Shown: positions 4,626-52,472 of the stretch, piece by piece | Numbering within the stretch: position 1 is the stretch's first letter | Layout: every line of letters begins with the position of its first letter | Virus record (IMG/VR): IMGVR_UViG_3300017917_002466 | Span: 62,001 to 126,000 of that record | Reading direction: 5' to 3' (one strand) | DNA length: 64,000 bases | Position numbers and translations under genes: made by a program | Notes under the pieces: model-generated | The model's database searches: none | Seen by the model: the letters and a program-made list of their open reading frames with translations, nothing else | Told to the model about the DNA's origin: nothing

Positions 4626-4660
4626 AATAGGGGAGTGGAGAAACCTTACTCCCCTATTTT
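4626..4660 (+). terminator. Rho-independent terminator
   Basis: AATAGGGGAGT/ACTCCCCTATT hairpin plus T tract after gp32. Confidence 0.8.
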
Positions 4661-4683
4661 ATTCAGGACTTAAGCATAAAAAA

Positions 4684-4789
4684 CATAAATACTCATAGGA
4701 TGTGTTGGGACAGAGGCCGTACACCTTTTTTCGCCCTAACGAAATTACCAACCATCTCTTACCGTCAACCTTTAGGGAGGTATCTTATG
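4684..4789 (+). promoter_or_regulatory. Late promoter variant plus conserved HEG leader RNA, copy 1
   Basis: CATAAATA; P1-GACAG-P2-TT-P3-TTA-P1'; P3 loop CCCTAA complementary to TTAGGG in the SD hairpin. Confidence 0.85.
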
Positions 4790-5506
4790 AGTATTATTTA
4801 CAAAATAACTAATTTAATTAACGGAAAGATTTACATTGGTCAACATTATACATCAGCAGATGATGGTTATTTGGGTTCTGGTAAATGGATTAAAAGAGCC
4901 ATTAAAAAGTACGGTAAAGAAAACTTCATACGTGAAACAATTGAGTTTTGTACTTCTGCTAATGTAGACGAAAAAGAAGTTTACTGGGTTAATAAGTTGG
5001 GTGCTACTAATCCTAAAGTTGGATATAATATTGATAAAGGCGGAACTGGTCGTTCACCAGGCTATAAACATTCAAAAGAAACCAAAGAAAAACTCAGACA
5101 AATTAATCTCCAAAGAGAAATAAAACCAGAATGGATAGAAAAATTTAAAAAAGTTAGAAAAGGATATAAACACAAAGAAAAAACTAAAAATAAAATATCT
5201 ATTAAACACAAAGGAATTAAACATTCAGAAGAAACTAAGAAATTATTGAGTTTAGTTTTTAAAGGTTTAACTAAAAAGAAATGGACTAAAAAACGAAAAG
5301 AACAAAGAATTAAAGAAACTATAGAAAACAATAAGTCAAAATCAAAATTTTCATACATTTTATCAAATAATGAAGACTTTTGGCAGTTAAATAAAAAACA
5401 AAGATTTATTATCAAAAGACAATTTCAACGTAAAAATACTGACATAATTGTTTATAAAGGTATAACTATTGAAAGGCATCTTAAAAATGAAAACTTTTCA
5501 AATTGA
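4787..5506 (+). CDS. Free-standing GIY-YIG homing endonuclease
   Basis: IIYKITNLINGKIYIGQH, YLGSG, NUMOD3-like KHSEETK repeats. Confidence 0.92.
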   Translation: MSIIYKITNLINGKIYIGQHYTSADDGYLGSGKWIKRAIKKYGKENFIRETIEFCTSANVDEKEVYWVNKLGATNPKVGYNIDKGGTGRSPGYKHSKETKEKLRQINLQREIKPEWIEKFKKVRKGYKHKEKTKNKISIKHKGIKHSEETKKLLSLVFKGLTKKKWTKKRKEQRIKETIENNKSKSKFSYILSNNEDFWQLNKKQRFIIKRQFQRKNTDIIVYKGITIERHLKNENFSN

Positions 5507-7582: not shown

Positions 7583-7690
7583 TATAAATAATCATAAGAT
7601 AGATTGGGACAGCTTCGACGGAAGTTTTCTATCCACATTAGAATTACCAATCAATCTCTTACTAATAACCTTATGTGGAGGTATCTTATG
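7583..7690 (+). promoter_or_regulatory. Late promoter plus HEG leader RNA, copy 2
   Basis: TATAAATA; same fold; loop TCCACAT pairs ATGTGGA overlapping the SD. Confidence 0.87.
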
Positions 7691-8542
7691 AGTATTATTT
7701 ACAAAACTACTAATCTAATCAACGGTAAAATTTATGTTGGACAACATAATACATCAGCAGATGATGGTTATTTGGGTTCTGGATTAAAGATTATAAAAGC
7801 TATAAAGAAATATGGCAAAGAAAATTTTAAAAGAGAAATTCTTGAATATTGTACTTCTGCTAATATTGATGAAAAAGAAATTTTTTGGGTTAATAAATTA
7901 GATTCTACAAATCCAGAAGTTGGTTATAATTTAGATTCTGGTGGTACAGGTTCTTTTAGAACAAGAACACAAGATTTTAAAAATAAAATAAGACAAATTA
8001 ATAAAAATATAGGAAAATGGAAAGGTGAAAATAATCCCATGTTTGGAATTAAAAGATGTGGAAAAGAAAATCCAAATTTTGGTAACAAATGGAACGCAGA
8101 TCAAAAACAAAAAATGAGTGTAATTCATAAAGGTAAAAAAATTTCAGAAGAACAAAAAGAAAAACAAAGACAAAGTATGTTAGGTAAAGTTAAAAGCGAA
8201 GAATCCAAAAGAAAACAAAGTCGGTCAATGATTGGAAAAAACATTGGAAAAAACATTGGAAAAATACGAAGTAAAGAATTCAAAGAAAATTTAAGTAAAA
8301 AATTAAAAGGAAAAAAATACTCAGAAGAACATAAACAAAAAATAAGTTTAGCTAAACAAGGTTATAATAATCCTTCGGCTAAATGGATATATGTATTATC
8401 TAATGGAATGAATTTTTATGAATATTTTTCTAAAAAAGAAAGACATAATATTAAAGAAACATTTAGAAGAAAAAAAGTTTTGGAGATTGAATATAAAAAT
8501 GTTATAATACATAAAACAATCAAGGAGGTTGTAAATGATTAA
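7688..8542 (+). CDS. Free-standing GIY-YIG homing endonuclease
   Basis: IIYKTTNLINGKIYVGQH, YLGSG, GENNPMFG NUMOD3-like repeats. Confidence 0.92.
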   Translation: MSIIYKTTNLINGKIYVGQHNTSADDGYLGSGLKIIKAIKKYGKENFKREILEYCTSANIDEKEIFWVNKLDSTNPEVGYNLDSGGTGSFRTRTQDFKNKIRQINKNIGKWKGENNPMFGIKRCGKENPNFGNKWNADQKQKMSVIHKGKKISEEQKEKQRQSMLGKVKSEESKRKQSRSMIGKNIGKNIGKIRSKEFKENLSKKLKGKKYSEEHKQKISLAKQGYNNPSAKWIYVLSNGMNFYEYFSKKERHNIKETFRRKKVLEIEYKNVIIHKTIKEVVND

Positions 8543-9472: not shown

Positions 9473-9578
9473 TATAAATACTCATAGATACTTTGAGACA
9501 GCGGATCATTACCGTTTCCTATCCAAGTTAGGATTATCAAAGCATCTCTTACAATAACCTTACTTGGAGGTATCTATG
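9473..9578 (+). promoter_or_regulatory. Late promoter plus HEG leader RNA, copy 3
   Basis: TATAAATA; same fold; loop TCCAAGT pairs ACTTGGA. Confidence 0.87.
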
Positions 9579-10274
9579 AGTATTATAATTTACAAATCAA
9601 CAAATATTGGTGAAAATCCAGAAAACGGTAAAAGTTATATTGGGTTTACTAAACAAAATTTGAATAAACGTAAAAGACAGCATTTAAATGCCGTTAAAAA
9701 TCATAGCAAATATATTTTTCATCAAGCTATTGACCGTTGGGGATTTGAAAGTTTTTCTTGGAAAATTATAGCAATTGTTGAAAATTCTTTAAAAGAAACA
9801 ACAGAAGTTAAAGCAATAAAAGTTTATAATACTCTAACACCAAATGGTTATAATAGTACAACTGGCGGTGAAGGTGGATTTGAAATGATCGATAAAATAA
9901 AAACAAAAATAAGTAATTCTATACGTGGTGAAAAACATCCCATGTTTGGTAAACATTTTTCACAAAAATCTAAAGAGAAAATGTTTAATGCACAAATTGG
10001 TAAAAAAAATCATTTTTATGGTAAAAAACATTCAATTGAAACAAAAAAGAAAATGAGTGAATCTCAAAGGAAACTTAATAAAGACATATATGGTGAAAAA
10101 AATCCTTTTAATAAATATCATTATTATTGTTCTAATAATAAAAATTATTGGAAAGATTTTACTATAAATGAAAGAACAAGTATTTGTGCAAAATTTAGAA
10201 AAGAAAATAAAGATATAATTATTTACAAAAGTATAATAATTATAAGAAAATTAAAAAATGAAAGAATTTTATAA
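9576..10274 (+). CDS. Free-standing GIY-YIG homing endonuclease
   Basis: IIYKSTN..GKSYIGFT..RKRQH, GYNSTTGG, GEKHPMFGK repeats. Confidence 0.9.
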   Translation: MSIIIYKSTNIGENPENGKSYIGFTKQNLNKRKRQHLNAVKNHSKYIFHQAIDRWGFESFSWKIIAIVENSLKETTEVKAIKVYNTLTPNGYNSTTGGEGGFEMIDKIKTKISNSIRGEKHPMFGKHFSQKSKEKMFNAQIGKKNHFYGKKHSIETKKKMSESQRKLNKDIYGEKNPFNKYHYYCSNNKNYWKDFTINERTSICAKFRKENKDIIIYKSIIIIRKLKNERIL

Positions 10275-10710
10275 TGGAGAATATCAGGTTGTCAATAAAC
10301 AAAAATATATTGGTGAAAAAAATCCAAGATATAGAAGTTCATGGGAATGTAGATTTTGTTACTTTTTGGATTTTCAACCAAAAGTTATTCTTTGGGGATA
10401 TGAATGTTTAGTTATCGAATATTTTAATGTTATAGATAAAAAAATACATCGGTATTATCCAGATTTTTATTTTGAAAAACTAGAACAAGATAACTCAATA
10501 AGTAAGTTTGTGGTAGAAGTTAAACCAGCGAATCAGACTGTTCCACCAAAACCACCAAAAAACGGAAATAAAAAAGCACAAAAAAGATATATTTATGAAG
10601 CTCACGAATATGTAAAAAATAAATGTAAATGGGAATCTTCTGAAGAATTTTGTAAAAAACGAGGATTAAAATTTAAAGTCATAACCGAAAATGAACTTTT
10701 TAATAGATAA
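10258..10710 (+). CDS. gp4-like head completion nuclease (TnsA-type)
   Basis: YRSSWE, HRYYPDF, VVEVKP, NKCKW..FKVITE. Confidence 0.8.
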   Translation: MKEFYNGEYQVVNKQKYIGEKNPRYRSSWECRFCYFLDFQPKVILWGYECLVIEYFNVIDKKIHRYYPDFYFEKLEQDNSISKFVVEVKPANQTVPPKPPKNGNKKAQKRYIYEAHEYVKNKCKWESSEEFCKKRGLKFKVITENELFNR

Positions 10711-19854: not shown

Positions 19855-19912
19855 TAAGTTTATTTATATAAATACTCATAAGATGTGTACAGAATATTAA
19901 AGGAAAAAAATA

Positions 19913-25394: not shown

Positions 25395-25468
25395 GCCCCC
25401 AAAGCATTAAGGTGATGCACTTGGCTCTTAACCAAGAGAAGAAGGTTCAATACCTTTTGGGGGTACCA
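25395..25468 (+). tRNA. tRNA-Lys(CTT)
   Basis: cttgg-ctCTTaa-ccaag; CCA. Confidence 0.9.
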
Positions 25469-25476
25469 AATTTTTT

Positions 25477-25562
25477 GGCGCGGATGGTAAGTGGTTGAAA
25501 TCAAACGGCTGTAACCCGTTCGCCTCACGGCTATGTAGGTTAAAATCCTACCCGCGTCACCA
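25477..25562 (+). tRNA. tRNA-Tyr(GTA)
   Basis: aacgg-ctGTAac-ccgtt; long variable arm; CCA. Confidence 0.9.
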
Positions 25563-25570
25563 AATTATAT

Positions 25571-25644
25571 AGGCTATTGGTGTAATAGAAACACATTTCT
25601 CTCCAAAAGAAAAGACAAGGGAGCATAACCTTTATAGCCTGCCA
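25571..25644 (+). tRNA. tRNA-Trp(CCA)
   Basis: tttct-ctCCAaa-agaaa; CCA. Confidence 0.85.
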
Positions 25645-25651
25645 ATTTTTT

Positions 25652-25726
25652 GCTTCCAAGGTGTTAAGGTTGCATTTCCGTCTTTTAAGCGGTAGGGTCT
25701 TGGTTCAAGTCCAAGTGGAAGCACCA
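25652..25726 (+). tRNA. tRNA-Lys(TTT)
   Basis: ctTTTaa loop; CCA. Confidence 0.88.
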
Positions 25727-25733
25727 AGTTTGT

Positions 25734-25810
25734 GGAACTGTAGCATAATTGGCTAGTGCACCACATTGTCAATGTGGGTTATGCGGGTTCAAATCCCGTC
25801 GGTTCCGCCA
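25734..25810 (+). tRNA. tRNA-Asp(GTC)
   Basis: ccaca-ttGTCaa-tgtgg; CCA. Confidence 0.9.
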
Positions 25811-25818
25811 TAAGTTAC

Positions 25819-25902
25819 ACCCTCGTCGCCTAGTGGTAATGGCACCAGACTTTTAATCTGACGAGCGCAAGCTCTTCACAGGTTCAAATCCTGTCGGGGG
25901 TA
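25819..25902 (+). tRNA. tRNA-Lys(TTT) with long variable arm
   Basis: caga-ctTTTaa-tctg; gagc-gcaa-gctc extra arm; no encoded CCA. Confidence 0.75.
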
Positions 25903-25914
25903 CTAAAAAGTTAT

Positions 25915-26001
25915 TCCAGAGTATGCAAACTGACAGGGCGGCTTGACTGTTAATCAAGTGTGGGAAACCATCTGTAGGTTTAAATCCTACCTCTGGAGCC
26001 A
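25915..26001 (+). tRNA. tRNA-Asn(GTT) with long variable arm
   Basis: cttga-ctGTTaa-tcaag; tgg-gaaa-cca extra arm; G73; CCA. Confidence 0.78.
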
Positions 26002-26036
26002 AATATTAACATTTACGGAATAATAAAAAGATATAA

Positions 26037-26112
26037 GGGTCTGTAGCTACAATGATAGAGCGCGAGCCCGTTAAGCTCGGAGATGTCAGTTTAACTCTGA
26101 CCGGACCCTCCA
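26037..26112 (+). tRNA. tRNA-Asn(GTT)
   Basis: cgagc-ccGTTaa-gctcg; CCA. Confidence 0.8.
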
Positions 26113-26118
26113 AATCAA

Positions 26119-26193
26119 GCAGTGTAGGCAGATCGGCTATGCGTCACTCTTCCAAAGTGAATCTGGTGAGTTCAACTCTCGCACACTGCACCA
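26119..26193 (+). tRNA. tRNA-Gly(TCC)
   Basis: tcact-ctTCCaa-agtga; CCA. Confidence 0.88.
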
Positions 26194-26200
26194 AAATTTC

Positions 26201-26274
26201 GGGGGTTTCTTCTAGTGGAAAGAAAACTGTCTCTGAAGCAGATAACGGTGGTTCAATTCCATCAACCCTCGCCA
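26201..26274 (+). tRNA. tRNA-Gln(CTG)
   Basis: ctCTGaa loop; CCA. Confidence 0.85.
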
Positions 26275-26292
26275 AAAAGTTTTTAGAAGAAA

Positions 26293-26454
26293 GCTGGGAA
26301 ACAGAGGTTCAAATCCTCTACTGAAGTTGATTTATAGAAGTATGCTGAATTTACTGGCAGGTAAATATAAGCAGAAAATATAAATCCTTTACAAATCAAA
26401 GCCTGCCAGCCGAGATAAGTAAAGTTCAGTTCATCTAGTGGGAGAATACCTGGC
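26293..26454 (+). ncRNA. Circularly permuted tRNA-like RNA with long internal hairpin
   Basis: T arm first, D arm last; ACTGAA/TTCAGT and GCTGGG/CCTGGC helices close a cloverleaf. Confidence 0.5.
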
Positions 26455-26461
26455 GTATTAT

Positions 26462-26536
26462 GGTGGTATTGGTGTAGTAGAAGCATCTGATCCTGTGAAG
26501 ATCAAGGGTTCGGAGCATATCCGAAATATCACCCCA
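26462..26536 (+). tRNA. tRNA-His(GTG)
   Basis: tgatc-ctGTGaa-gatca; G-1, C73; CCA. Confidence 0.88.
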
Positions 26537-26544
26537 AAATTTAT

Positions 26545-26633
26545 TAGGAAGTAGGCCCGTAATTGGTAGCGGTCTTGTTCTGGAAACAAGTGGCAATATG
26601 CTCCTGGGAGTTCGAGTCTCCCCTTCCTAACCA
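26545..26633 (+). tRNA. Class II tRNA, Ser(GGA) or Pro(TGG), anticodon register ambiguous
   Basis: cttgt-tctggaa-acaag; long variable arm; CCA. Confidence 0.65.
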
Positions 26634-26641
26634 AGAATTAT

Positions 26642-26716
26642 GCCGCCGTAGCCAAGTAGAAGGTGATGCCTCTGCAAAAGGTAATCTTTGGGGCGCAACT
26701 CCCCACGGTGGCTCCA
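26642..26716 (+). tRNA. tRNA-Cys(GCA)
   Basis: ctGCAaa loop; U73; CCA. Confidence 0.88.
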
Positions 26717-26793
26717 AATTATTTTCACCAATCTGTGATTTTTTATCATCAAAAGATATAAATACCTCTGATGGGTAAACCAAAAGAGGATTT

Positions 26794-27423
26794 ATGGACT
26801 TAGAAAATAAAAGATACCAATATCTAAAAGACTGGAGAAAAAGAACTAAGCAAAGAATGGTTGATGCTTTTGATGGAAAATGTGGAATTTGTGGATATAA
26901 TAAATGTAAAGAAGCATTAGAATTTCATCATATTGATCCAACAAAAAAAGATTTTACTATTTCAAAAAACAAATTTAACAATTGGGAAAAATTAGTTAAA
27001 GAATTAAAAAAATGTATCTGTATTTGTTCAAATTGTCATAAAGAAATTCATAATGAAATAATTAAAATTCCAATTGATGTTAAAAAATTTAATGAAAATT
27101 ATAATGAATATAGAGTAGAAAAAGAAATTAATTATATTGAATGTCCAGTTTGTAAAAAATTAATGGAAGATACACGTAATTATTGTTCGATGGATTGTTT
27201 TAATAAGATTAGAGAAAAAGTAGATTGGAAAATATTTGATTTAAATAAAATGATTTTAACATCATCTATTTTAGAAATTTCTAAAATAGTTGGAGTTTCA
27301 AATACATCTATTCAAAAAAGACTAAAAAAATTAAATCTTCCTTTTAAAAGAAAAGATATTTTAAAATATAAAATGGATGCTGGCGTGGCTGGTAGTGACG
27401 GTTTGTCTGATAAACAAATGTAG
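26794..27423 (+). CDS. HNH endonuclease inside the tRNA array
   Basis: CGICGY..LEFHHIDP..CSNCHKEIH; late promoter and SD hairpin upstream. Confidence 0.87.
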   Translation: MDLENKRYQYLKDWRKRTKQRMVDAFDGKCGICGYNKCKEALEFHHIDPTKKDFTISKNKFNNWEKLVKELKKCICICSNCHKEIHNEIIKIPIDVKKFNENYNEYRVEKEINYIECPVCKKLMEDTRNYCSMDCFNKIREKVDWKIFDLNKMILTSSILEISKIVGVSNTSIQKRLKKLNLPFKRKDILKYKMDAGVAGSDGLSDKQM

Positions 27424-27451
27424 CGAAGTTCGATTCTTCGGGCATCCACCA
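27375..27451 (+). tRNA. tRNA-Ile(GAT)
   Basis: tttgt-ctGATaa-acaaa; CCA; overlaps the HNH 3' end. Confidence 0.82.
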
Positions 27452-27457
27452 AATTGT

Positions 27458-27540
27458 ACCTTGAGCGTAAAGTCGTACATGGCAGAACTCCGGACTCTGC
27501 TGTTATGTAAAACGTGGTGAAAATCCCATCCAAGGTGCCA
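27458..27540 (+). tRNA. Atypical tRNA-Arg(CCG)
   Basis: ctCCGga loop; non-canonical D and T arms; CCA. Confidence 0.55.
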
Positions 27541-27546
27541 AATTAT

Positions 27547-27622
27547 GCCGCTTGAGCAAGTGTGGTCATTGCATCAGTTTGAAGAACTGACTAACACGGT
27601 TCGATTCCGTGGGGCGGCACCA
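27547..27622 (+). tRNA. tRNA-Phe(GAA)
   Basis: tcagt-ttGAAga-actga; CCA. Confidence 0.9.
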
Positions 27623-27729
27623 AGTTTTTATAAATACAAGTAGAAGTTTGGTCCTCAAAAGAAAGATTCAATTTAACCAAAAAGTTACTGAACAAGGAGA
27701 AATCTATTGAAAATACTTAAACCAGGAAC

Positions 27730-27948
27730 ATGAATACAAAAAACCGTTTTGATTTTTTGTTATGTTATTTGGGTAGACACAACTGGAAGAACGAAAGACC
27801 TAAACCTTTATTAACAATGTTCGGTTTAATTATTACATTTGAGAAATATAGATATTGTCAAAGGTGCTTAAAAAGACAAATCTGGGAAGACATTTACGGT
27901 GATTTAAATAAGATTGGAGAATGGATAGACTGTAAAAAGAATTCATAG
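27730..27948 (+). CDS. Hypothetical small protein
   Basis: ORF between tRNAs; C..GRHNW..CQRC. Confidence 0.4.
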   Translation: MNTKNRFDFLLCYLGRHNWKNERPKPLLTMFGLIITFEKYRYCQRCLKRQIWEDIYGDLNKIGEWIDCKKNS

Positions 27949-28020
27949 TGGTGTAGAATAATGTAGTTCCCCTCGTTTTCAGCGAGAAATGTGCGGGTTC
28001 AAGTCTCGTCGCCACTACCA
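27947..28020 (+). tRNA. tRNA-Glu(TTC)
   Basis: ctcg-ttTTCag-cgag; CCA. Confidence 0.8.
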
Positions 28021-28027
28021 AATTTAT

Positions 28028-28103
28028 GCTCCCATCGTCTAACGGTTTAGGATGCCAGATTTTCAATCTGAGAACGTGAGTTCAACTCTCACTGGGAGTA
28101 CCA
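28028..28103 (+). tRNA. tRNA-Glu(TTC)
   Basis: caga-ttTTCaa-tctg; CCA. Confidence 0.88.
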
Positions 28104-28109
28104 AGTTAT

Positions 28110-28185
28110 GCCGTTCAAGCAATTGAAGTCAATGCGCTTGCCTGAAGAGCAAGATAATCCGGGGCAGTACCGGGGGGCGGCACCA
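28110..28185 (+). tRNA. tRNA-Phe(GAA)
   Basis: cttgc-ctGAAga-gcaag; CCA. Confidence 0.82.
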
Positions 28186-28221
28186 CGGAAAATGCGGGGT
28201 CGAATCCCGTCACCACTACCA
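28186..28221 (+). pseudogene. Orphan 3' half of tRNA-Glu
   Basis: gaaaatgcggggtcgaatcccgtcaccactacca resembles the 3' half of 27947-28020. Confidence 0.7.
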
Positions 28222-28255
28222 AATTACCGAAGGACATAATTTTATAAATATAAGT

Positions 28256-28582
28256 ATGAAATGCTTATTTTTACATAAAGGATGTCCATATAATTATAAT
28301 CAACATAACTTACAACATTCTTATGGTTGGATAAGTCCAGATGGTATTTTTTATGGTTGTGAAAAATATGAGCATATAAAAAGATCAGAGTTCTTACTAC
28401 CTAATTATCCAAATTCGGAAGCTAAATTAGAATATGACAGATGGATAAAAGTTTCAGAAGAATTAAATGATAAAATAATATGTTTTGGAAAAGTTACACA
28501 AGCACAAATAGATATATTATCAGATTGGTGTATTGTGCATTGCTTTAAATTTCCACACGAATATATCGATAATTTTCTATAA
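28256..28582 (+). CDS. Hypothetical protein
   Basis: GWISPDG..C..YEH motif; late promoter upstream. Confidence 0.6.
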   Translation: MKCLFLHKGCPYNYNQHNLQHSYGWISPDGIFYGCEKYEHIKRSEFLLPNYPNSEAKLEYDRWIKVSEELNDKIICFGKVTQAQIDILSDWCIVHCFKFPHEYIDNFL

Positions 28583-28635
28583 CATAGTTCATAAATACCA
28601 TTGATGCTATTTACGACATCAACGGGGGAAATAGA

Positions 28636-28815
28636 TTGGAAATTATTTTAGTTTTATCCATAGCAGTATTTTTAGCAAGTGGACTAAGTTTTTATTTTGG
28701 AATGTTGTTTGAAGGATTGAGATGGTCTGAAAAAACAAATATTAACGGAAAAATAATATCTTTTATGGGTAATCAATATAAAGTAACAAAAATACTTTTA
28801 AAACCAAAAGAATAG
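28636..28815 (+). CDS. Small membrane protein (TTG start, not in ORF track)
   Basis: MEIILVLSIAVFLASGLSFYFGMLF; G-rich SD. Confidence 0.45.
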   Translation: MEIILVLSIAVFLASGLSFYFGMLFEGLRWSEKTNINGKIISFMGNQYKVTKILLKPKE

Positions 28816-28836
28816 GACGATTAAAAATTTTAAAAT

Positions 28837-28912
28837 CGGGATGTGGCGCAGCGAGTAGCGCGCTCGCTTTGGGAGCGAGTGGTCGCCGGGGCGGAGCCGG
28901 CCATCCCGACCA
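28837..28912 (+). tRNA. tRNA-Pro(TGG)
   Basis: ctcgc-ttTGGga-gcgag; CCA. Confidence 0.88.
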
Positions 28913-28928
28913 AGTTTCAAAAATTCTA

Positions 28929-28985
28929 AAGGATGAGTTCAGCAATCAAAAATTCTTATTAAAAAAGAAAACAAGTTCATCCTGT
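28929..28985 (+). ncRNA. Y-RNA-like element 1
   Basis: AAGGATGAGTTCAGCAA..TTCATCCTGT; inner ttctt-attaaaa-aagaa hairpin. Confidence 0.75.
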
Positions 28986-28993
28986 GAATCAAT

Positions 28994-29080
28994 GGAAGGT
29001 TAGAGCGTAATTAGTAGCGTGTCGGTCTTGAAAACCGAACCCGAAAGGGCCTGGGGATGCGATTTCCTCACCTTCCGCCA
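28994..29080 (+). tRNA. tRNA-Ser(TGA)
   Basis: tcggt-ctTGAaa-accga; long arm; G73; CCA. Confidence 0.88.
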
Positions 29081-29086
29081 ATTTTT

Positions 29087-29161
29087 GGGGGATTAGTTTA
29101 TTCAGGAAAACATAAGCCTTGCAAGCTTAAAAGCCCGGAGCGTAGCCGGGATTCTCCACCA
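29087..29161 (+). tRNA. tRNA-Ala(TGC)
   Basis: ctTGCaa loop; G3:U70; CCA. Confidence 0.9.
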
Positions 29162-29167
29162 AATTAT

Positions 29168-29242
29168 ACCAAGTGGCAGGTCAGCATCTGAGGACGTCTC
29201 ATAAGCGTTCTGAATAGGGGTCAGCACCCTAACTTGGTACCA
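29168..29242 (+). tRNA. tRNA-Met(CAT)
   Basis: gacgt-ctCATaa-gcgtt; CCA. Confidence 0.8.
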
Positions 29243-29256
29243 AAGGAGTAACTTAT

Positions 29257-29564
29257 ATGCCAAAAGCCACAAAGGAAAATCAACCTTAACAGTTGTAGGT
29301 GAAACTGAAGATGGTAAGAAAGTTGTCAGAGGATTGTTTTTAATAAGCACTTCAATAACTGGATTACCTTTAGAAGATTGCTTAGAAATTTTGAAAAAGA
29401 ATAATCTTGTGGTAGATTGGATAGACTTTATAGAAGATGCTATCAAGTATAAATGGAAGATGGAAAGAACATTGATAAAGATAGAAACATCAGTTGAAGA
29501 AGTTTACGGAAAAGAATATTGTCAAGAAGTAATGAAAAGAATTAAAGGATGGGTTCAGCAATAA
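29257..29564 (+). pseudogene. Hypothetical protein with frameshift near its start
   Basis: SD GGAG plus ATG at 29257 is out of frame with the open KSHKGKSTLTVVGETEDGKKVVRGLFLIS.. frame. Confidence 0.5.
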
Positions 29565-29664
29565 AAATCCATTACAAGGCGCGTGTCGGTGGTTCGATTC
29601 CATCCGCTCCCACATTACTGGAGTGTAGCTCAGTTGGTAGAGCAGCAAAAAAAAGTCCATCCTG
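29545..29664 (+). ncRNA. Y-RNA-like element 2 enclosing a circularly permuted tRNA-Val (YrlA-like)
   Basis: AAGGATGGGTTCAGCAA..TCCATCCTG around T arm, loop-closed acceptor stem and D arm. Confidence 0.85.
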
Positions 29665-29678
29665 AATTTATGTAAAAT

Positions 29679-29757
29679 GCCAAGTTCGCATAGCGGTCGA
29701 TTGCGCCTCTCTTGTAAGGAGGAATTACCGGGGGTTCGACTCCCTCACTTGGCTCCA
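29679..29757 (+). tRNA. tRNA-Thr(TGT)
   Basis: ctTGTaa loop; CCA. Confidence 0.88.
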
Positions 29758-29770
29758 GACTATAAAACAG

Positions 29771-29831
29771 AAGACTGGTTCCAGCAAACCAAAACTATTT
29801 GCTTGTTAAGCAAACAAAGTAATCCAGTCTG
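29771..29831 (+). ncRNA. Y-RNA-like element 3
   Basis: AAGACTGGTTCCAGCAA..CCAGTCTG; inner tttgc-ttGTTaa-gcaaa anticodon-like hairpin. Confidence 0.75.
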
Positions 29832-29860
29832 AGTTTAAATTTTTTAAAAAATAATAAATC

Positions 29861-29950
29861 GGTAAAATGGGCGAGTGGTTTATGCCAGCACACTGCTAAC
29901 GTGCCGGGCCCTAAAAAGCTCCACAGGTTCGAATCCTGTTTTTACCGCCA
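29861..29950 (+). tRNA. tRNA-Ser(GCT)
   Basis: ctGCTaa loop; long arm; G73; CCA. Confidence 0.9.
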
Positions 29951-29957
29951 AATAAAC

Positions 29958-30034
29958 GCACCCATAGTTCAGATAGCAAGAATACGTTCTTGGTAAGAAT
30001 GAGGCGGTTGGTGCAAGTCCAACTGGGTGCTCCA
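29958..30034 (+). tRNA. tRNA-Thr(GGT)
   Basis: cgttc-ttGGTaa-gaatg; CCA. Confidence 0.88.
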
Positions 30035-30037
30035 TAT

Positions 30038-30111
30038 GCCACTATAGCTTAATGTAAAGCCTTCGCCTCGTAAGCGAAAAGATTTCATTTCAAATATGAA
30101 TAGTGGCTCCA
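30038..30111 (+). tRNA. tRNA-Thr(CGT)
   Basis: ttcgc-ctCGTaa-gcgaa; CCA. Confidence 0.85.
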
Positions 30112-30120
30112 AAGATAAAT

Positions 30121-30199
30121 ACCTGTGTATCTCACCAGTCTTCTAAACTGTGTAAGAGTAATTGGATTAATGTGGGTTCAAGTCCCATCACAGGTTCCA
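30121..30199 (+). tRNA. D-armless tRNA-like RNA, anticodon TCT
   Basis: Perfect acceptor ACCTGTG/CACAGGT, T arm and CCA; no D arm; ~20-nt variable region. Confidence 0.65.
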
Positions 30200-30227
30200 C
30201 CTGACAATCAAGGAGAAATATCATATA

Positions 30228-30431
30228 ATGAAACGTAGAGATTTTCTAGGATTTACAATAGCATCCTTACTCTTAGTAGGATGTGCAGCTAGCCCAAATA
30301 TTATATATTATGTTGAGTCAGAGAAAGAAGTTGAATCGATGAGAAAACGATTAGAAGAAAGGGGTGAAAAAGTAGTTGATGTGAAGTTTGATAAAATAAG
30401 TAATTTGTATATCATTAAAATTAAAAAATAA
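30228..30431 (+). CDS. Small putative Tat-signal lipoprotein
   Basis: MKRRDFL..LLLVGC. Confidence 0.6.
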   Translation: MKRRDFLGFTIASLLLVGCAASPNIIYYVESEKEVESMRKRLEERGEKVVDVKFDKISNLYIIKIKK

Positions 30432-30445
30432 TTTAAGAAAGAAAA

Positions 30446-30922
30446 ATGAATAAGCAAAATACTAATAAACTTATAAAAAAACATAGATATATGTTTGATG
30501 AATTATTCAGAAGCCGATTAATCAAAAAAGAACAAGATAGATTGGCAGATGAATTTTCAGAAGCTAAAATTGAAGACGATGAAATAAAAATTGCTCAAAT
30601 AATGGAAGAACAAAGACAAGTTGGTTCTTATTATCCAATAGCCTTTGGTTTTGAATGTGGTGATGGATGGTATAAACTTCTTGATGATTTAATGACAGAA
30701 ATTGAAAAAATAGATACAGAAAAGAAGGTTGAAGTTCATCAAGTAAAAGAAAAATCTGGTGGATTAAGATTTTATGCCGAGAATACTTCAAATGAAATAG
30801 AAGATATTATCAGCCGATATATGGATAGATCATATCAAACTTGTGAAATTTGTGGGCAACCAGGAAAAACAAACAAAAAAGGATGGTTGAGAACGGCTTG
30901 TAAGGAACACGAAAGAAATTAA
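30446..30922 (+). CDS. Conserved phage hypothetical protein
   Basis: FECGDGW..QVKEKSGGLRFY..CEICG. Confidence 0.75.
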   Translation: MNKQNTNKLIKKHRYMFDELFRSRLIKKEQDRLADEFSEAKIEDDEIKIAQIMEEQRQVGSYYPIAFGFECGDGWYKLLDDLMTEIEKIDTEKKVEVHQVKEKSGGLRFYAENTSNEIEDIISRYMDRSYQTCEICGQPGKTNKKGWLRTACKEHERN

Positions 30923-30930
30923 GAGATTAA

Positions 30931-31016
30931 GCGGTCGTGGAGGAATGGCAGACTCACAAGGCTAAGAACCTTGTGGAAGAAATTCCGTGAGGGTTCAACT
31001 CCCTCCGACCGCACCA
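30931..31016 (+). tRNA. tRNA-Leu(AAG)
   Basis: acaagg-ctAAGaa-ccttgt; long arm; A73; CCA. Confidence 0.82.
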
Positions 31017-31105
31017 AATAAAAATATCAAAGAAGCTTTGGAAAAATTAAAACTTACATATAATGGTGGAAATTTCGTAAGAGCAAAGAAAATATTAAAT
31101 GATAT

Positions 31106-31182
31106 GCTGGGGTAGCCCAATTGGTAGAGGCGATTTGTTTAGAGCGAATATGTTGTGGGTTCGAATCCCATCTCCAGTACCA
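31106..31182 (+). tRNA. tRNA-Leu(TAG), short variable loop
   Basis: atttg-ttTAGag-cgaat; CCA. Confidence 0.82.
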
Positions 31183-31190
31183 AGATTTAA

Positions 31191-31265
31191 GCAGTGTTGG
31201 CCTAATAGTTGGGCGCTAGCCTTCCAAGCTGGTTCAAGTGGGAGCGTTACCCACACACTGCTCCA
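31191..31265 (+). tRNA. tRNA-Gly(TCC)
   Basis: ctagc-ctTCCaa-gctgg; CCA. Confidence 0.82.
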
Positions 31266-31272
31266 AGTTTAT

Positions 31273-31366
31273 GCTAAGATGGTGGAATGGAAAGACACGG
31301 TAGCTTCAGAAGCTACTGAGAACCTTGCTAGTTCTCGTGTAGGTTCGAATCCTGCTCTTAGCACCA
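31273..31366 (+). tRNA. tRNA-Leu(CAG)
   Basis: gtagc-ttCAGaa-gctac; long arm; CCA. Confidence 0.9.
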
Positions 31367-31374
31367 GAAATTAA

Positions 31375-31449
31375 GCTCTTGTAGTGTAACGTATAGCACG
31401 AGTCGCGTCGAACGATTTAGTGAGGGTTAGATTCCTTCCAAGAGCGCCA
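31375..31449 (+). tRNA. tRNA-Arg(TCG), G at position 33
   Basis: agtcg-cgTCGaa-cgatt; CCA. Confidence 0.65.
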
Positions 31450-31453
31450 ATAC

Positions 31454-31525
31454 ACTTCCTTAGTGAAAAGGAAATAATATTACCCTACGAAGGTAAAGTT
31501 GATGGTTCAAATCCATCAGGAAGTA
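31454..31525 (+). tRNA. tRNA-Arg(ACG)
   Basis: ttacc-ctACGaa-ggtaa; no encoded CCA. Confidence 0.82.
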
Positions 31526-31529
31526 TATT

Positions 31530-31667
31530 TTTATAATGTAACTCTCTATGACAATTAGCACAAACAAGAATACATTTATCTAGTTCTTTTTGAAAAATAT
31601 CCCAAATTCTATATTTGGCCTTTGAAAGAGAGAATTCTTTTTTATTCTGGTCTAAAAGGTGTACCAA
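31530..31667 (-). pseudogene. HNH endonuclease relic
   Basis: HLLDQNKKEFSLS..ELDKCILVCANCHRELH, paralogous to 26794-27423. Confidence 0.75.
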
Positions 31668-31684
31668 AAAATTATGGAGAAATT

Positions 31685-32074
31685 ATGAATAAATTTAAAA
31701 GTGTAGTTATTAGATCAGCAGAAAATAATATTCACAATAAACAACTAAGAAAAAGAGTTGAATATAGTCTTTCCGCTGACTTTGAATATATACCCAGAGA
31801 AATTGTTGTTTTGATAATTGTCAATGGTAAATATTATTTGAAAAGTAAAAAGGGTGATTATGTAGATGATAAAACTAAAGTTAATGTAGATGCTTTGATT
31901 TATAATAATATTTACTATGCTTATATTTTGGAAAAGCAAAAAAATAAATCAATTACTTTTAAAAAAAAAGAAGACGTTAAAGACAAGAATAAGTATAAAA
32001 ATAAAAATGCCATCGCATTGATTCCTAAAAAATGGATTGAAGATGGAACTATTGTTCTTGATAAAAAAGTATGA
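31685..32074 (+). CDS. Hypothetical protein
   Basis: GGAG SD before ATG 31685. Confidence 0.55.
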   Translation: MNKFKSVVIRSAENNIHNKQLRKRVEYSLSADFEYIPREIVVLIIVNGKYYLKSKKGDYVDDKTKVNVDALIYNNIYYAYILEKQKNKSITFKKKEDVKDKNKYKNKNAIALIPKKWIEDGTIVLDKKV

Positions 32075-32075
32075 T

Positions 32076-32149
32076 GCTCCTATCAGCTAACGGTAGGCTT
32101 CCAAACCTTCAATCTGAGAATTAAGTTTCAACTTCCCATAGGAGTACCA
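32076..32149 (+). pseudogene. Degenerate tRNA-Glu(TTC)
   Basis: Similar to 28028-28103, but the T and anticodon stems are disrupted. Confidence 0.65.
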
Positions 32150-32156
32150 AGTTTAT

Positions 32157-32233
32157 GCGCCTGTAATTCAGTAGAATAGAATAATGGTTTTCTAAACCAT
32201 AAGTCACAGGTTTGAATCCTGTCAGGCGTACCA
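32157..32233 (+). tRNA. tRNA-Arg(TCT)
   Basis: atggt-ttTCTaa-accat; CCA. Confidence 0.88.
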
Positions 32234-32241
32234 AATAACAT

Positions 32242-32316
32242 ACAGCTATAGTACAATGGATAGTGCACTAGTTTCCTAAACCTGAAATTCTGGTTCGATT
32301 CCAGATAGCTGTACCA
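32242..32316 (+). tRNA. tRNA-Arg(CCT)
   Basis: ttCCTaa loop; CCA. Confidence 0.8.
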
Positions 32317-32337
32317 AATTTTATCTCTTTTTATCAT

Positions 32338-32422
32338 AGGAGCCAAGGCAACTGGTTGTGGCCGCCAGTCTTATAAGCTGGGAAACTAAACGAGGTGGGT
32401 TCAATTCCCACGGCTCCTACCA
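32338..32422 (+). tRNA. tRNA-Ile(TAT)
   Basis: ccagt-ctTATaa-gctgg; enlarged variable region; CCA. Confidence 0.8.
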
Positions 32423-32459
32423 AAAATATAAATATTTTCAAATATACAATGGAGGGTGA

Positions 32460-32669
32460 ATGGCACACATCTGCGAATTTTTTCCTTGTCATAAACTAAT
32501 TGATGGGTTTAATTGTAAAAATTGTTATTGCCCACTTTATGACCATACCGATTGTCAACATTTTGGTGGGGAACCTAAATTTCTTTACTCAAAAGGGGAG
32601 AAAATAAAAGACTGTTCAGATTGTATTCTCCCTCATAAGCCAGACTTTAAAATACAAACAAGATATTGA
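32460..32669 (+). CDS. Cysteine-rich small domain protein
   Basis: [24 protein letters not shown]. Confidence 0.7.
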
Positions 32670-32694
32670 CATTTTACAAGGATGATATTATATT
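32666..32694 (+). promoter_or_regulatory. sigma70-type promoter
   Basis: TTGACA-N17-TATATT. Confidence 0.7.
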
Positions 32695-32702
32695 AATAAT
32701 AT

Positions 32703-32778
32703 GCCTGTTTCTTCTAGTGGTATAGGAAGTTTGCCTTACAAGCAGAAAACGATGGTTCGATTCCATCAATAGGCACCA
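32703..32778 (+). tRNA. tRNA-Val(TAC)
   Basis: ctTACaa loop; CCA. Confidence 0.88.
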
Positions 32779-32785
32779 AATATTT

Positions 32786-32856
32786 ACTCGTTTAGTTCAA
32801 CGGAAGAATATCTGTTTGACGTACAGAAGACAATAGTTCAACTCTATTAACGAGTA
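32786..32856 (+). tRNA. tRNA-Val(GAC)
   Basis: tctgt-ttGACgt-acaga; no encoded CCA. Confidence 0.82.
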
Positions 32857-32917
32857 TAAAAACAAATTATGATTCGTTAAATTATGGTAATGGACAAAAA
32901 ACTAAACATAAAAATAA

Positions 32918-32991
32918 GCGGAAGTAGTTCAACGGTAGAATGCGACTTTGCCAAGGTTGAGACAGGAGTTCAACTCTCCTTTTCCGCACCA
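32918..32991 (+). tRNA. tRNA-Gly(GCC)
   Basis: ttGCCaa loop; CCA. Confidence 0.88.
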
Positions 32992-32997
32992 AATTAC

Positions 32998-33074
32998 TGG
33001 GGTGTTGCCTAATGGATCAAGGCGCGGGTCTTTGAAGCCTGTCCGTGAAGGTTCAATTCCTTCCACCCCAACCA
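32998..33074 (+). tRNA. tRNA-Gln(TTG)
   Basis: ctTTGaa loop; U1:A72; CCA. Confidence 0.88.
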
Positions 33075-33130
33075 GATAAACATAAATATTAATATAGGAT
33101 TTGATTTTGAACATTTTAAAGGAGGTTTGT

Positions 33131-33433
33131 ATGAAGATGGTTCCGTTGTACAATAAGTTGATTGTTGAACTTCTTCCCGAAGAGTCCGAAAAGAGATCAG
33201 CAACAGGTTTAATTCTTCCGGGAAAAATTTCTCCGTATTACAGGGGAAAGGTGACTGGTGTTGGTAAAGGTCATTATCAAAATGCTCAAAGAATTCCAAT
33301 GGATGTTAAGGAAGGAGATATTGTAGTCTTCTTAAAGAACTGTGGAATGGGAATTGAGTTTGATAACGGAAATAACCCAACAAAGCTTATTTTGGATGAT
33401 ACAAATATTTACGCAGTAGAGGAAAACGACTAA
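33131..33433 (+). CDS. groES: GroES co-chaperonin
   Basis: PLYNKLIV..SATGLILP..GKVTGVGKG..DVKEGDIV. Confidence 0.9.
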   Translation: MKMVPLYNKLIVELLPEESEKRSATGLILPGKISPYYRGKVTGVGKGHYQNAQRIPMDVKEGDIVVFLKNCGMGIEFDNGNNPTKLILDDTNIYAVEEND

Positions 33434-33489
33434 ATTGTCACAGCCAAACTGGGAATTTTAGATCAAAAATAAAAAAATTGTATATAAAT

Positions 33490-33573
33490 GCTCTGGTGGT
33501 GGAATTGGTATACACATCACGCTTAAGACGTGATGCCCGTAAGGGATTGGGGGTTCAACTCCCCCCCAGAGTA
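33490..33573 (+). tRNA. tRNA-Leu(TAA)
   Basis: tcacg-ctTAAga-cgtga; long arm. Confidence 0.9.
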
Positions 33574-33583
33574 CTAAATTAAT

Positions 33584-33663
33584 GCTCCGGTAGCCCAACT
33601 TTGGTAGAGGCCGTAAGCTCAAACCTTACGTTAGTGTGGGTCCGAATCCCATCCGGAGTACCA
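33584..33663 (+). tRNA. tRNA-Leu(CAA), short variable loop
   Basis: gtaag-ctCAAac-cttac; CCA. Confidence 0.82.
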
Positions 33664-36952: not shown

Positions 36953-36986
36953 AAGAAAGAAAATGGAAAGAAATGGAGAAAATGTT

Positions 36987-37715: not shown

Positions 37716-37792
37716 TATAAATAATGTGAAGAGACAGCCACTCTATAACTCCAGTGGTTGGTTAGGTATCTCACTACCTAACCTTATCTCTT
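37716..37792 (+). ncRNA. Orphan variant of the HEG leader RNA core
   Basis: TATAAATA then AGA-GACAG-P2-TT-P3-TTA-TCTCTT; no SD hairpin or HEG. Confidence 0.6.
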
Positions 37793-37848
37793 ATTAGTAT
37801 TTATATAAATACATATAAAGATTTATATTTATTAAATAAGGATTAAGA

Positions 37849-52278: not shown

Positions 52279-52472
52279 TCCTTATAATCCGAAAGATCAA
52301 TTTCTTCTCCACAGGCACACTTAACTTTTATTATTGTACCAAGTCCTGTTGGAGTAAAACTGAAAGTCAATCTTCCACCAATAGCACCACAGTCCTCTTT
52401 CAGTTTACATTTGTGGTTTTTATCCCAAATAGCAAACTGTTCATCCATATCTTCATCTAAAGCAAATATCAT
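52272..52472 (-). CDS. Conserved small phage protein
   Basis: GAIGGRLTFSFTPTGLGTIIKVKC.CG. Confidence 0.7.
   Translation of the reverse strand: MIFALDEDMDEQFAIWDKNHKCKLKEDCGAIGGRLTFSFTPTGLGTIIKVKCACGEEIDLSDYKEW

What the first reader, a model, noticed from the sequence alone, without database searches (positions are those of the whole stretch)
4684..4789. Riboswitch-like leader RNA (three-way junction plus kissing loop onto the Shine-Dalgarno hairpin) on five different homing endonuclease genes
Seen: five HEGs each have a T4-type late promoter followed by the same ~90-nt fold. They are GIY-YIG at 4787, 7688, 9576 and 48115(-), and HNH at 50622. The fold is P1, invariant GACAG, hairpin P2, UU, hairpin P3, invariant UUA, P1', an A/C-rich linker, then hairpin P4 whose loop and 3' strand carry the SD GGAGG. 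Primary sequence differs but pairing is kept by compensation. P1: GAUGUGUUGG/CCAACCAUC, GAUAGAUUGG/CCAAUCAAUC, GAUACUUUGA/UCAAAGCAUC, GAUGAGUUGG/CCAGCCCAUC, GUGUAGAGA/UCUCUAUAC. In every copy the P3 loop is the exact complement of the P4 loop/SD edge: CCCUAA/UUAGGG (4734-39/4772-77), UCCACAU/AUGUGGA (7632-38/7673-79), UCCAAGU/ACUUGGA (9522-28/9562-68), CCCAUAA/UUAUGGG (48170-64/48130-24), CCUUAAC/GUUAAGG (50567-73/50607-13). Established: T4 HEGs (I-TevI and others) use simple SD-sequestering hairpins, and cobalamin riboswitches use an L5-L13 kissing loop onto an RBS hairpin. Inference: this is a translational switch that senses a ligand or protein and travels with unrelated nuclease families. 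The phage's B12-dependent NrdJ makes cobalamin one ligand worth testing, although the B12-box nucleotides are absent.
Basis: partly seen in the sequence, partly recalled or inferred. Interest (0 to 1): 0.95.

Follow-up and report, generated by a model that had tools for sequence, protein, structure and literature searches.

The report
Kissing-loop leader RNA of phage homing endonucleases
A folded RNA leader of about 95 nt follows the late promoter of many homing-endonuclease genes in uncultured T4-like phages and buries the ribosome-binding site in a loop-loop contact; it most likely keeps these selfish nucleases translated little and late, is absent from Rfam, and shows no evidence of sensing a ligand.

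Summary
All five leaders exist at the stated coordinates. They fold as P1 / GAC / P2 / P3 / UUA / P1' / linker / P4, and the P3 loop is complementary to the P4 loop that carries the 5' half of the Shine-Dalgarno sequence (SD).

Covariance models found about 90 further matches (some redundant) in viral and metagenome contigs. 92-94% of pair cells are paired, 22-23 of 26 pairs show compensatory changes, and there are more than 40 different loop-loop sequence pairs. Nothing in Rfam 15 matches.

Full leaders precede only homing endonucleases: GIY-YIG, HNH, LAGLIDADG, a Vsr-like zinc-finger family and DUF7487. Some of these ORFs are decayed.

It pairs the late promoter and start-site region with the spacer, AUG and codons 2-3. 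This is the known T4 I-TevI / Aeh1 mobE device, which blocks translation of read-through transcripts.

Best reading: a mobile promoter-plus-leader cassette that throttles endonuclease translation by SD occlusion, with P0 adding late-only gating. Ligand sensing is untested and the cobalamin idea is not supported. Verdict: new variant of a known kind.

The parts
4684..4691 (+). Copy 1: late-promoter-like CATAAATA
4687..4701 (+). Copy 1: P0 5' strand (promoter 3' half plus predicted start-site region); overlaps the base of P1 by 4 nt
   Evidence: duplex -16.8 kcal/mol, z -5.8; coordinates
4698..4757 (+). Copy 1: three-way junction. P1 4698-4708/4748-4757, GAC 4709-4711, P2 4712-4728, P3 4729-4744 (loop L3 4734-4739), UUA 4745-4747
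4768..4781 (+). Copy 1: P4 hairpin ACCU/AGGU. Loop L4 4772-4777 is complementary to L3; SD GGGAGGU 4775-4781
4782..4795 (+). Copy 1: P0 3' strand (spacer, AUG 4787-4789, codons 2-3)
4787..5506 (+). GIY-YIG/NUMOD3 homing endonuclease, 239 aa
7583..7700 (+). Copy 2: TATAAATA 7583-7590; P0 7586-7600/7683-7700; leader 7595-7691; L3 7632-7638; L4 7673-7679; SD 7677-7682
7688..8542 (+). GIY-YIG/NUMOD3 homing endonuclease, 284 aa
9473..9584 (+). Copy 3: TATAAATA 9473-9480; P0 9477-9489/9572-9584 (each strand one nt shorter than in copies 1 and 2); leader 9484-9579; L3 9522-9528; L4 9562-9568
9576..10274 (+). GIY-YIG/NUMOD3 homing endonuclease, 232 aa
48102..48221 (-). Copy 4: TATAAATA 48220-48213; P0 48221-48204/48119-48102; leader 48208-48112; L3 48170-48164; L4 48130-48124
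47408..48115 (-). GIY-YIG-type homing endonuclease, 235 aa (phrog_314, phrog_5123)
50519..50625 (+). Copy 5: TATAAATA 50519-50526; leader 50530-50625; P1 50531-50540/50583-50592; L3 50567-50573; P4 50603-50617; L4 50607-50613; no P0
50622..51227 (+). HNH homing endonuclease, 201 aa, GTG start
   Evidence: PHROG HNH families; paralog L197:2544-3221 hits Pfam HNH PF01844
37716..37792 (+). Possible degenerate sixth copy: TATAAATA plus a three-stem junction. There is no L3 partner and no SD hairpin, and J12 is reduced. A second TATAAATA follows at 37804
   Evidence: (23.6 bits, E 0.13)

Best explanation
The element is the 5' part of a self-contained, mobile expression cassette for free-standing homing endonucleases: a T4-type late promoter plus a structured leader of about 95 nt.

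Shown from sequence. P1, P2 and P3 form a three-way junction with an invariant core, and P2 and P3 abut with no nucleotide between them. The 6-8 nt P3 loop is complementary to the P4 loop, which holds the 5' half of a strong SD (GGAGG). The P4 stem (ACCU/AGGU) pairs the 3' half, so in the folded leader the whole SD is base-paired.

Inferred. The junction acts as a rigid scaffold that aims L3 at the SD hairpin. The resulting tertiary domain blocks 30S binding, so endonuclease translation stays low whatever the genomic context of the cassette.

In the seg-like GIY-YIG subgroup (four of the five window copies) a second layer is present. Helix P0 pairs the 3' half of the promoter and the start-site region with the spacer, AUG and codons 2-3. 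Read-through transcripts from the upstream gene contain both strands, so the start codon is locked. Transcripts that start at the late promoter lack most of the 5' strand, so the start codon is freed while the SD stays under kissing-loop control. This is the I-TevI/mobE logic. Whether the kissing loop is opened only by ribosome competition or by some factor is unknown.
For: - Fold and covariation.
- Loop-loop complementarity, with more than 40 different sequence pairs and a fixed distance to the start codon.
- SD fully inside the L4 and P4 3' strand.
- P0: duplex -11 to -19.5 kcal/mol, z -3.6 to -8.2, in seg-like copies only. It carries compensatory changes: a one-nt deletion on both strands in copy 3, GGA/UCC in copy 4, and a U/A swap in L122.
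- Computed cost of opening the spacer plus AUG falls from 10.0, 4.8, 16.7 and 7.4 to 1.4, 1.9, 5.2 and 2.5 kcal/mol between read-through and late transcripts. In the HNH copy it is unchanged. The SD stays at 5-8.7 kcal/mol.
- P1 begins close to the predicted start site: 39 of 50 copies have 0-6 nt between TATAAATA and the first P1 pair.
- Full leaders precede only homing endonucleases, of five families.
- The T4 precedent of RBS-sequestering structures with embedded late promoters: PMC2988022 section 12; PMC3014915 section 29.
Against: - There is no RNA or expression data. The source is a pond metagenome, the one search run (kind 'any') listed only DNA runs, and a search restricted to RNA runs was not made. 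The start site, the fold in vivo and the repression are therefore all inferred.
- A simple hairpin or a weak SD would suffice for mere attenuation. An invariant junction core (GAC, A-U, G.U, U-A, UUA) combined with a strong SD hints at something more specific, such as a defined tertiary fold or an effector.
- Copies without P0 would be repressed equally in early and late transcripts, so the timing logic does not explain them.
- Other endonuclease genes in the same genome do without the leader (L207; window 49874-50470(-)).
Confidence: 0.6

Rival explanations
1. It is a true riboswitch-like or protein-responsive switch. The three-way junction is an aptamer or binding site whose occupancy stabilises or releases the kissing loop, so endonuclease translation responds to a metabolite, an ion, or a phage or host protein.
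For: About a dozen invariant junction nucleotides persist while all the stems vary freely. A G.U pair is conserved next to the junction. The SD is strong but sequestered. Kissing-loop length is held at 6-8 bp even in 16-nt loops, which suggests tuned, reversible stability. SD-occluding tertiary pairings without any alternative helix occur in known riboswitches (own knowledge: SAM-II, preQ1-II, class-II cobalamin).
Against: There is no candidate ligand and no gene-function logic, since the downstream genes are nucleases of five families. No conserved alternative structure was seen. There is no Rfam match. The conserved core is small enough to be a purely architectural junction.
Confidence: 0.2
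2. It is mainly a stability or protection element. A stem at the very 5' end of the late mRNA, plus burial of GGAG, shields the message from 5'-end-dependent decay and from RegB-type cleavage at GGAG. Effects on translation are secondary.
For: P1 starts at or next to the predicted +1. T4 RegB cuts GGAG in SD regions, and RNA structure protects such sites (PMC3014915 sections 5 and 8). Junction-only copies exist without any SD partner (window 37716, L098, L292, L117, L118, L303).
Against: This does not explain why L3 must pair with the SD loop in nearly every full copy, nor why the element is limited to endonuclease genes. At least one junction-only copy is an evident deletion relic (L178, with only an HNH C-terminal remnant behind it). 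No RegB gene was looked for.
Confidence: 0.12
3. It is not a functional RNA. The copies are similar only because the cassettes are recent duplicates, or because the DNA serves as a recombination substrate, as PeSL cassettes do.
For: Leader subtypes are shared between different endonuclease families in one genome (identical P2 in window 50530 and L116), so recombination between leaders does occur.
Against: Stems differ in sequence but stay paired, with 22-23 of 26 pairs showing double changes. Loop pairs covary in more than 40 versions. In cellular genomes the same sequence pattern almost never has the fold: 3 of 80, against about 54 of 67 in viral contigs.
Confidence: 0.03
4. It is a cobalamin (or other catalogued) riboswitch, or a self-cleaving ribozyme.
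For: Only the general idea of a loop-loop contact onto an RBS hairpin, plus a class II-like RNR gene in the window (TSCPD domain).
Against: Nothing in Rfam 15 matches at the gathering threshold or at E<=10 on four copies. There are only six unpaired conserved nucleotides, too few for known ribozyme cores.
Confidence: 0.02

Closest known systems
RBS-sequestering hairpins with an embedded late promoter on T4-family homing endonuclease genes (I-TevI, I-TevII, I-TevIII, segB, Aeh1 mobE; PMC2988022 section 12, PMC3014915 section 29)
   Same: A late promoter sits immediately upstream of the nuclease gene. An RNA helix whose 5' strand lies at or before the late start site sequesters the translation initiation region, so only late-promoter transcripts should be translatable. 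P0 in four window copies does exactly this.
   Different: Here the two strands are about 95 nt apart and enclose a conserved three-way junction, and the SD itself is held by a separate hairpin and a loop-loop contact. Copies on HNH, Vsr-like and LAGLIDADG genes have the junction and kissing loop but no P0.
'RNA hairpins' with TATAAATA and two mutually complementary motifs upstream of free-standing endonucleases in marine metagenome 'fractured genes' (Dassa et al. 2009, PMC2677866 section 14)
   Same: The setting matches: environmental T4-like sequences, GIY-YIG and Vsr-like endonucleases, a late promoter inside or next to the structure, and endonuclease 3' ends overlapping the next gene. It may be the same element seen in part.
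   Different: They were described only as hairpins predicted by RNAfold. No three-way junction, loop-loop pairing or covariation analysis was reported. I could not compare sequences, because neither the figure nor the supplement is held.
Class-II cobalamin riboswitch L5-L13 kissing loop, and SAM-II/preQ1-II-type SD-occluding pseudoknots (own knowledge)
   Same: A tertiary loop-loop or pseudoknot pairing that directly includes the RBS serves as the expression platform.
   Different: There is no sequence or core similarity (no Rfam hit), no known ligand, and a different junction. The kissing-loop sequence varies freely here.
PeSL mobile promoter/stem-loop cassettes of T4-type phages (PMC2839356, PMC4122927)
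   Same: A short, conserved regulatory module (promoter plus structure) is repeated many times in a T4-type genome and is associated with modular gene exchange.
   Different: PeSLs combine an early promoter with a terminator-like stem-loop and act as DNA recombination substrates. This element uses a late promoter, is restricted to endonuclease genes and is shaped by RNA-level covariation.

Membership tests
Any Rfam 15 family | Covariance-model score at or above the curated gathering threshold | tested here: not met
   Whole window: only 34 tRNAs. Permissive scans of four copies gave only chance-level hits, E 0.3-9, far below threshold.
Cobalamin riboswitch | Conserved four-way-junction core with a B12 box | tested here: not met
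   No RF00174 or related hit even at E<=10. The junction here is three-way, with a GAC/UUA core.
Cobalamin riboswitch | Kissing loop between the aptamer loop and the RBS hairpin loop (class II) | tested here: met
   An analogous L3-L4 pairing is present. This is an analogy of mechanism only, not evidence of membership.
T4-type late-promoter / RBS-sequestering hairpin on endonuclease genes (I-TevI, mobE) | A stable helix sequesters the RBS or start codon of the endonuclease | tested here: met
   P0 of -11 to -19.5 kcal/mol over the spacer plus AUG in four copies; P4 plus the kissing loop over the SD in all five.
T4-type late-promoter / RBS-sequestering hairpin on endonuclease genes (I-TevI, mobE) | The late promoter is placed so that late transcripts lack the 5' strand of the inhibitory helix | tested here: inconclusive
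   TATAAATA overlaps the P0 5' strand, and the start site predicted about 6 nt downstream (own knowledge of T4 late promoters) removes most of that strand. No transcript ends are available. This is not met for copy 5, which has no P0.
Riboswitch (general) | Direct, specific ligand binding that changes the expression platform | not testable with these tools
   Sequence shows only a conserved junction. No ligand can be inferred from the gene context.
Small self-cleaving ribozymes (hammerhead, twister, pistol, hatchet) | The family's conserved catalytic core | tested here: not met
   No Rfam hit. The junction strands GAC and UUA do not match the hammerhead core (own knowledge).
PeSL cassettes | Early promoter plus terminator-like stem-loop flanking variable genes | tested here: not met
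   The promoter is the late type (TATAAATA) and the structure is a leader ending at the start codon.

The most novel reading that the evidence does not exclude
The invariant three-way junction is a sensor for a small molecule, an ion, or a conserved phage or host protein. It gates the kissing loop, so one portable RNA switch controls selfish nucleases of at least five unrelated families. This would be the first riboswitch-like regulator dedicated to mobile endonuclease genes.
Probability: 0.18. Interest if true: 0.85.

Novelty: new variant of a known kind. Interest (0 to 1): 0.64.

Why it matters
Phage homing endonucleases were known to be held in check by simple RBS hairpins. This element shows that a large group of environmental T4-like phages uses a much more elaborate and portable solution, which moves between nuclease families as a unit.

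It is an uncatalogued RNA family with unusually clean covariation, including a tertiary loop-loop contact. That makes it a good model for how tertiary RNA contacts tune translation, and a ready-made context-independent 'low and late' expression module.

If the junction proves to bind an effector, it would link the activity of selfish DNA to a physiological signal.

Tried and rejected
- **Rfam**, at gathering and permissive thresholds: nothing.
- **blastn/megablast** of the region and of the leader against GenBank phages: no match.
- **Cultured phages.** The closest GIY-YIG, Vsr-like and LAGLIDADG relatives are only 30-48% identical. Four of the five GIY-YIG loci I fetched abut or nearly abut the upstream gene, and the model with filters off finds no leader in any of the five. 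No experimental host system was identified.
- **RNA-seq support.** The one search run (kind 'any') listed only DNA runs from the pond study. A search restricted to RNA runs was not made, and read laying was not used.
- **Protein-based expansion.** Only 7 of 80 GIY-YIG relatives carry the leader. Among 66 Vsr-like relatives scanned, only two loci identical to the query itself do. The HNH query found only itself.
- **First loose DNA pattern:** swamped by chance hits. A refined pattern worked.
- **Leader as coding sequence:** rejected. In-frame upstream ORFs exist in copies 1-3, but copy 4 has a stop and the indels do not keep the frame.
- **P0 in non-GIY copies:** absent.
- **A conserved alternative pairing for the linker or L3:** none seen by eye.
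- **Literature:** searches for a described junction or kissing-loop leader on endonuclease genes found none.
- **Dassa et al. 2009:** the figure and supplement could not be read, so identity with their hairpins is unresolved.

Full report
**1. What is there**

Reading the five sites directly confirms the description. Each has TATAAATA (CATAAATA at 4684), a leader of about 95 nt and the start codon of a nuclease gene. MAFFT plus RNAalifold on the five copies alone returns P1, P2, P3 and P4, with 14 of 26 pairs showing double compensatory changes. The combination TATAAATA..GACAG occurs five times in the window against 0.09 expected.

The proteins are as stated:
- GIY-YIG/NUMOD3 at 4787, 7688 and 9576.
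- A GIY-YIG-type endonuclease at 48115(-).
- An HNH endonuclease at 50622. Its paralog elsewhere in the same genome hits Pfam HNH.

The phage is T4-like, with UvsX, gp41, gp32, primase, RNase H and 34 tRNAs. It has no close relative among GenBank phages. The window is part of IMG/VR contig 3300017917_002466, which is 253,664 bp long and comes from a pond metagenome.

**2. Refined anatomy**

The order is:
- P1, of 9-10 bp;
- GAC;
- P2, which always opens with A-U and then G.U;
- no nucleotide between P2 and P3;
- P3, which nearly always opens with U-A;
- UUA;
- P1';
- a linker of 10-20 nt;
- P4, usually ACCU/AGGU.

The 6-7 nt P4 loop plus the 3' strand of P4 contain the whole SD. With the kissing loop formed, every SD nucleotide is paired.

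**3. It is a family, not five paralogs**

A covariance model built from the five copies finds only those five strongly in the window. It recovers further copies near GIY-YIG relatives in IMG/VR.

A sequence pattern taken from the invariant positions gives 64 loci in IMG/VR. About 54 of the 67 matches have the full fold by the model. The same pattern in 596 Gb of bacterial and archaeal genomes gives the number of matches expected by chance (96). Only 3 of the 80 scanned have the fold, and all three lie on MAG contigs. This serves as a control against bias from selecting by pattern. A capped metagenome scan added 31 more.

Pair statistics:
- First set of 22 sequences: 94.4% of pair cells paired, 22 of 26 pairs with double changes, about 50% paired when the 3' partner is slid.
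- Later set of 31 metagenome sequences, a few of them re-finds of IMG/VR copies: 92.0% and 23 of 26.

Both alignments were fitted to the model, which favours its structure. The slid controls and the RNAalifold result on unfitted data argue that the signal is real.

**4. The kissing loop**

In 22 of 24 copies, L3 has an exact Watson-Crick partner of 6 nt or more ending 7-10 nt before the start codon. Only 43 of 552 cross-pairings between different copies reach that length. In a set of 62 the automatic count is at least 53 of 62, against 12% for cross-pairings. In six of the nine misses my script chose the wrong UUA, and by eye these have 6-7 bp. More than 40 different sequence pairs occur. This is the strongest single piece of evidence in the case.

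**5.

In the seg-like GIY-YIG copies, the 3' half of the promoter and the start-site region (AAAUACUCAUAGGAU) is complementary to the spacer, AUG and codons 2-3 (AUCUUAUGAGUAUU). This applies to four of the five window copies and to L001, L002, L004, L020, L122 and others.

- Duplex energies are -11 to -19.5 kcal/mol, with z-scores of -3.6 to -8.2 against shuffles.
- Copies on HNH, Vsr-like, LAGLIDADG and other genes score like shuffles.
- P0 covaries. Copy 3 lacks one nucleotide on both strands, copy 4 has GGA/UCC where the others have GAUA/UAUC, and L122 has a U/A swap.

The computed cost of opening the spacer plus AUG, in kcal/mol:

| Copy | Read-through transcript | Late transcript |
|---|---|---|
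| 1 (4787) | 10.0 | 1.4 |
| 2 (7688) | 4.8 | 1.9 |
| 3 (9576) | 16.7 | 5.2 |
| 4 (48115) | 7.4 | 2.5 |
| 5 (50622, HNH) | 5.2 | 4.4 |

The late transcript here starts at the sixth base after TATAAATA. The SD stays costly to open in late transcripts, at 5-8.7 kcal/mol.

This is the arrangement established for T4 I-TevI and Aeh1 mobE, and proposed for I-TevII, I-TevIII and segB (PMC2988022 section 12; PMC3014915 section 29). Dassa et al. 2009 reported hairpins containing TATAAATA and two mutually complementary motifs upstream of GIY-YIG and Vsr-like endonucleases in marine metagenomes (PMC2677866 section 14). That may be part of this element, but I could not check it.

**6. Gene association**

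Every full leader (junction plus kissing loop) that I examined precedes a homing endonuclease or the wreck of one:
- two GIY-YIG subfamilies;
- HNH;
- LAGLIDADG;
- a zinc-finger 'KYDYS' family (DUF4379/DUF723/DUF5889), probably the Vsr-like family of Dassa et al.;
- DUF7487.

Several intact leaders sit before ORFs cut to 9-43 codons: L116, L161, L194, L274 and L302.

The source genome has at least nine copies. Its HNH leader and the leader of a Vsr-like remnant share an identical P2, so leaders are exchanged between nuclease families.

The leader is not universal. Only 7 of 80 GIY-YIG relatives carry it. Among the Vsr-like relatives only loci identical to the query do. Other endonuclease genes of the same genome have plain leaders.

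Junction-only copies without an SD partner also exist: window 37716, L178, L183, L303, L292, L098, L117 and L118. L178 is clearly a deletion relic, with only the C-terminal HNH motif behind it. I read these copies as decay products, but an independent role for the junction is not excluded.

**7. Mechanism**

Shown: the fold, the covariation, the complete pairing of the SD in the folded state, and P0 with its position relative to the promoter.

Inferred: the transcription start site (from the T4 rule), that the structure blocks 30S binding, and that P0 confines translation to late-promoter transcripts.

My best reading is a portable cassette that makes endonuclease expression low and, where P0 is present, late, independent of where the cassette lands.

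Two observations argue for something more than passive attenuation: the invariance of the junction core, and the use of a strong SD rather than a weak one. A ligand- or protein-responsive switch therefore remains a live minority possibility. Nothing supports cobalamin. Protection of the 5' end and of GGAG from nucleases (PMC3014915 sections 5 and 8) may be an additional benefit.

**8. Novelty**

The kind of regulation is known: RNA structures that sequester the translation start of phage homing endonucleases, with an embedded late promoter. The architecture appears undescribed and is absent from Rfam 15. It comprises the conserved three-way junction, the covarying kissing loop onto the SD hairpin, and portability across five nuclease families. 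I therefore class it as a new variant of a known kind.

Noticed in passing
window 37716-37811: An orphan: TATAAATA plus a three-stem junction with no SD partner, lying directly after an HNH gene (36906-37625, Pfam HNH_5). It is followed by a palindromic TATTTATATAAATA that carries a late-promoter motif on both strands. The same palindrome occurs at 19861-19874.
   Followed up: partly
window 5469-5506, 8535-8542, 10258-10274: Three leader-bearing endonuclease genes overlap the start of the next ORF by 38, 8 and 17 nt. Dassa et al. 2009 reported overlaps of 6-69 bp for free-standing endonucleases.
   Followed up: no
window 10258-10710: An ORF with a TnsA-like endonuclease N-terminal domain lies immediately after the GIY-YIG gene at 9576 and before the RNR gene.
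   Followed up: no
   Followed up: partly
window 49874-50593 (-): A second HNH endonuclease, divergent from the one at 50622. Its likely start is ATG 50470, after GAGGG. It has no structured leader, and the ORF listing start at 50593 would be antisense to the 50622 leader.
   Followed up: partly
window 25395-33660 and 46207-46280: 34 tRNA genes, interspersed with several TATAAATA motifs and short ORFs. RtcB (48222-49541), an RNA ligase (54530-55567) and IMPDH/GMP reductase (52469-53539) lie nearby.
   Followed up: no
window 4630-4665: A G+C-rich hairpin followed by a T-run (terminator-like) between gp32 and the promoter of copy 1. The other copies follow the upstream stop codon within about 10-15 nt.
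   Followed up: no
L116:842-973; L178:1708-1792(-); L197:704-800 and 2453-2547: Further copies in the same 253-kb genome, outside the window. One precedes a 43-codon remnant of a Vsr-like endonuclease. One has lost P4 and the N-terminus of its HNH gene. Two lie on intact Vsr-like and HNH genes.
   Followed up: yes
L131, L092, L302, L285, L276, L299, L180, L419 (P3 region): A subclass in which P3 carries a 16-nt loop with conserved flanks (GAAAC..GAGUA) around the 7-8 nt kissing sequence. It occurs mostly on the 'FYVYVYLDPRK' type of GIY-YIG genes and on DUF7487 genes.
   Followed up: no
window 4700-4786, 7604-7687: In-frame upstream ORFs run through the leaders of copies 1 and 2. They are not conserved in the other copies and are regarded as chance.
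   Followed up: partly
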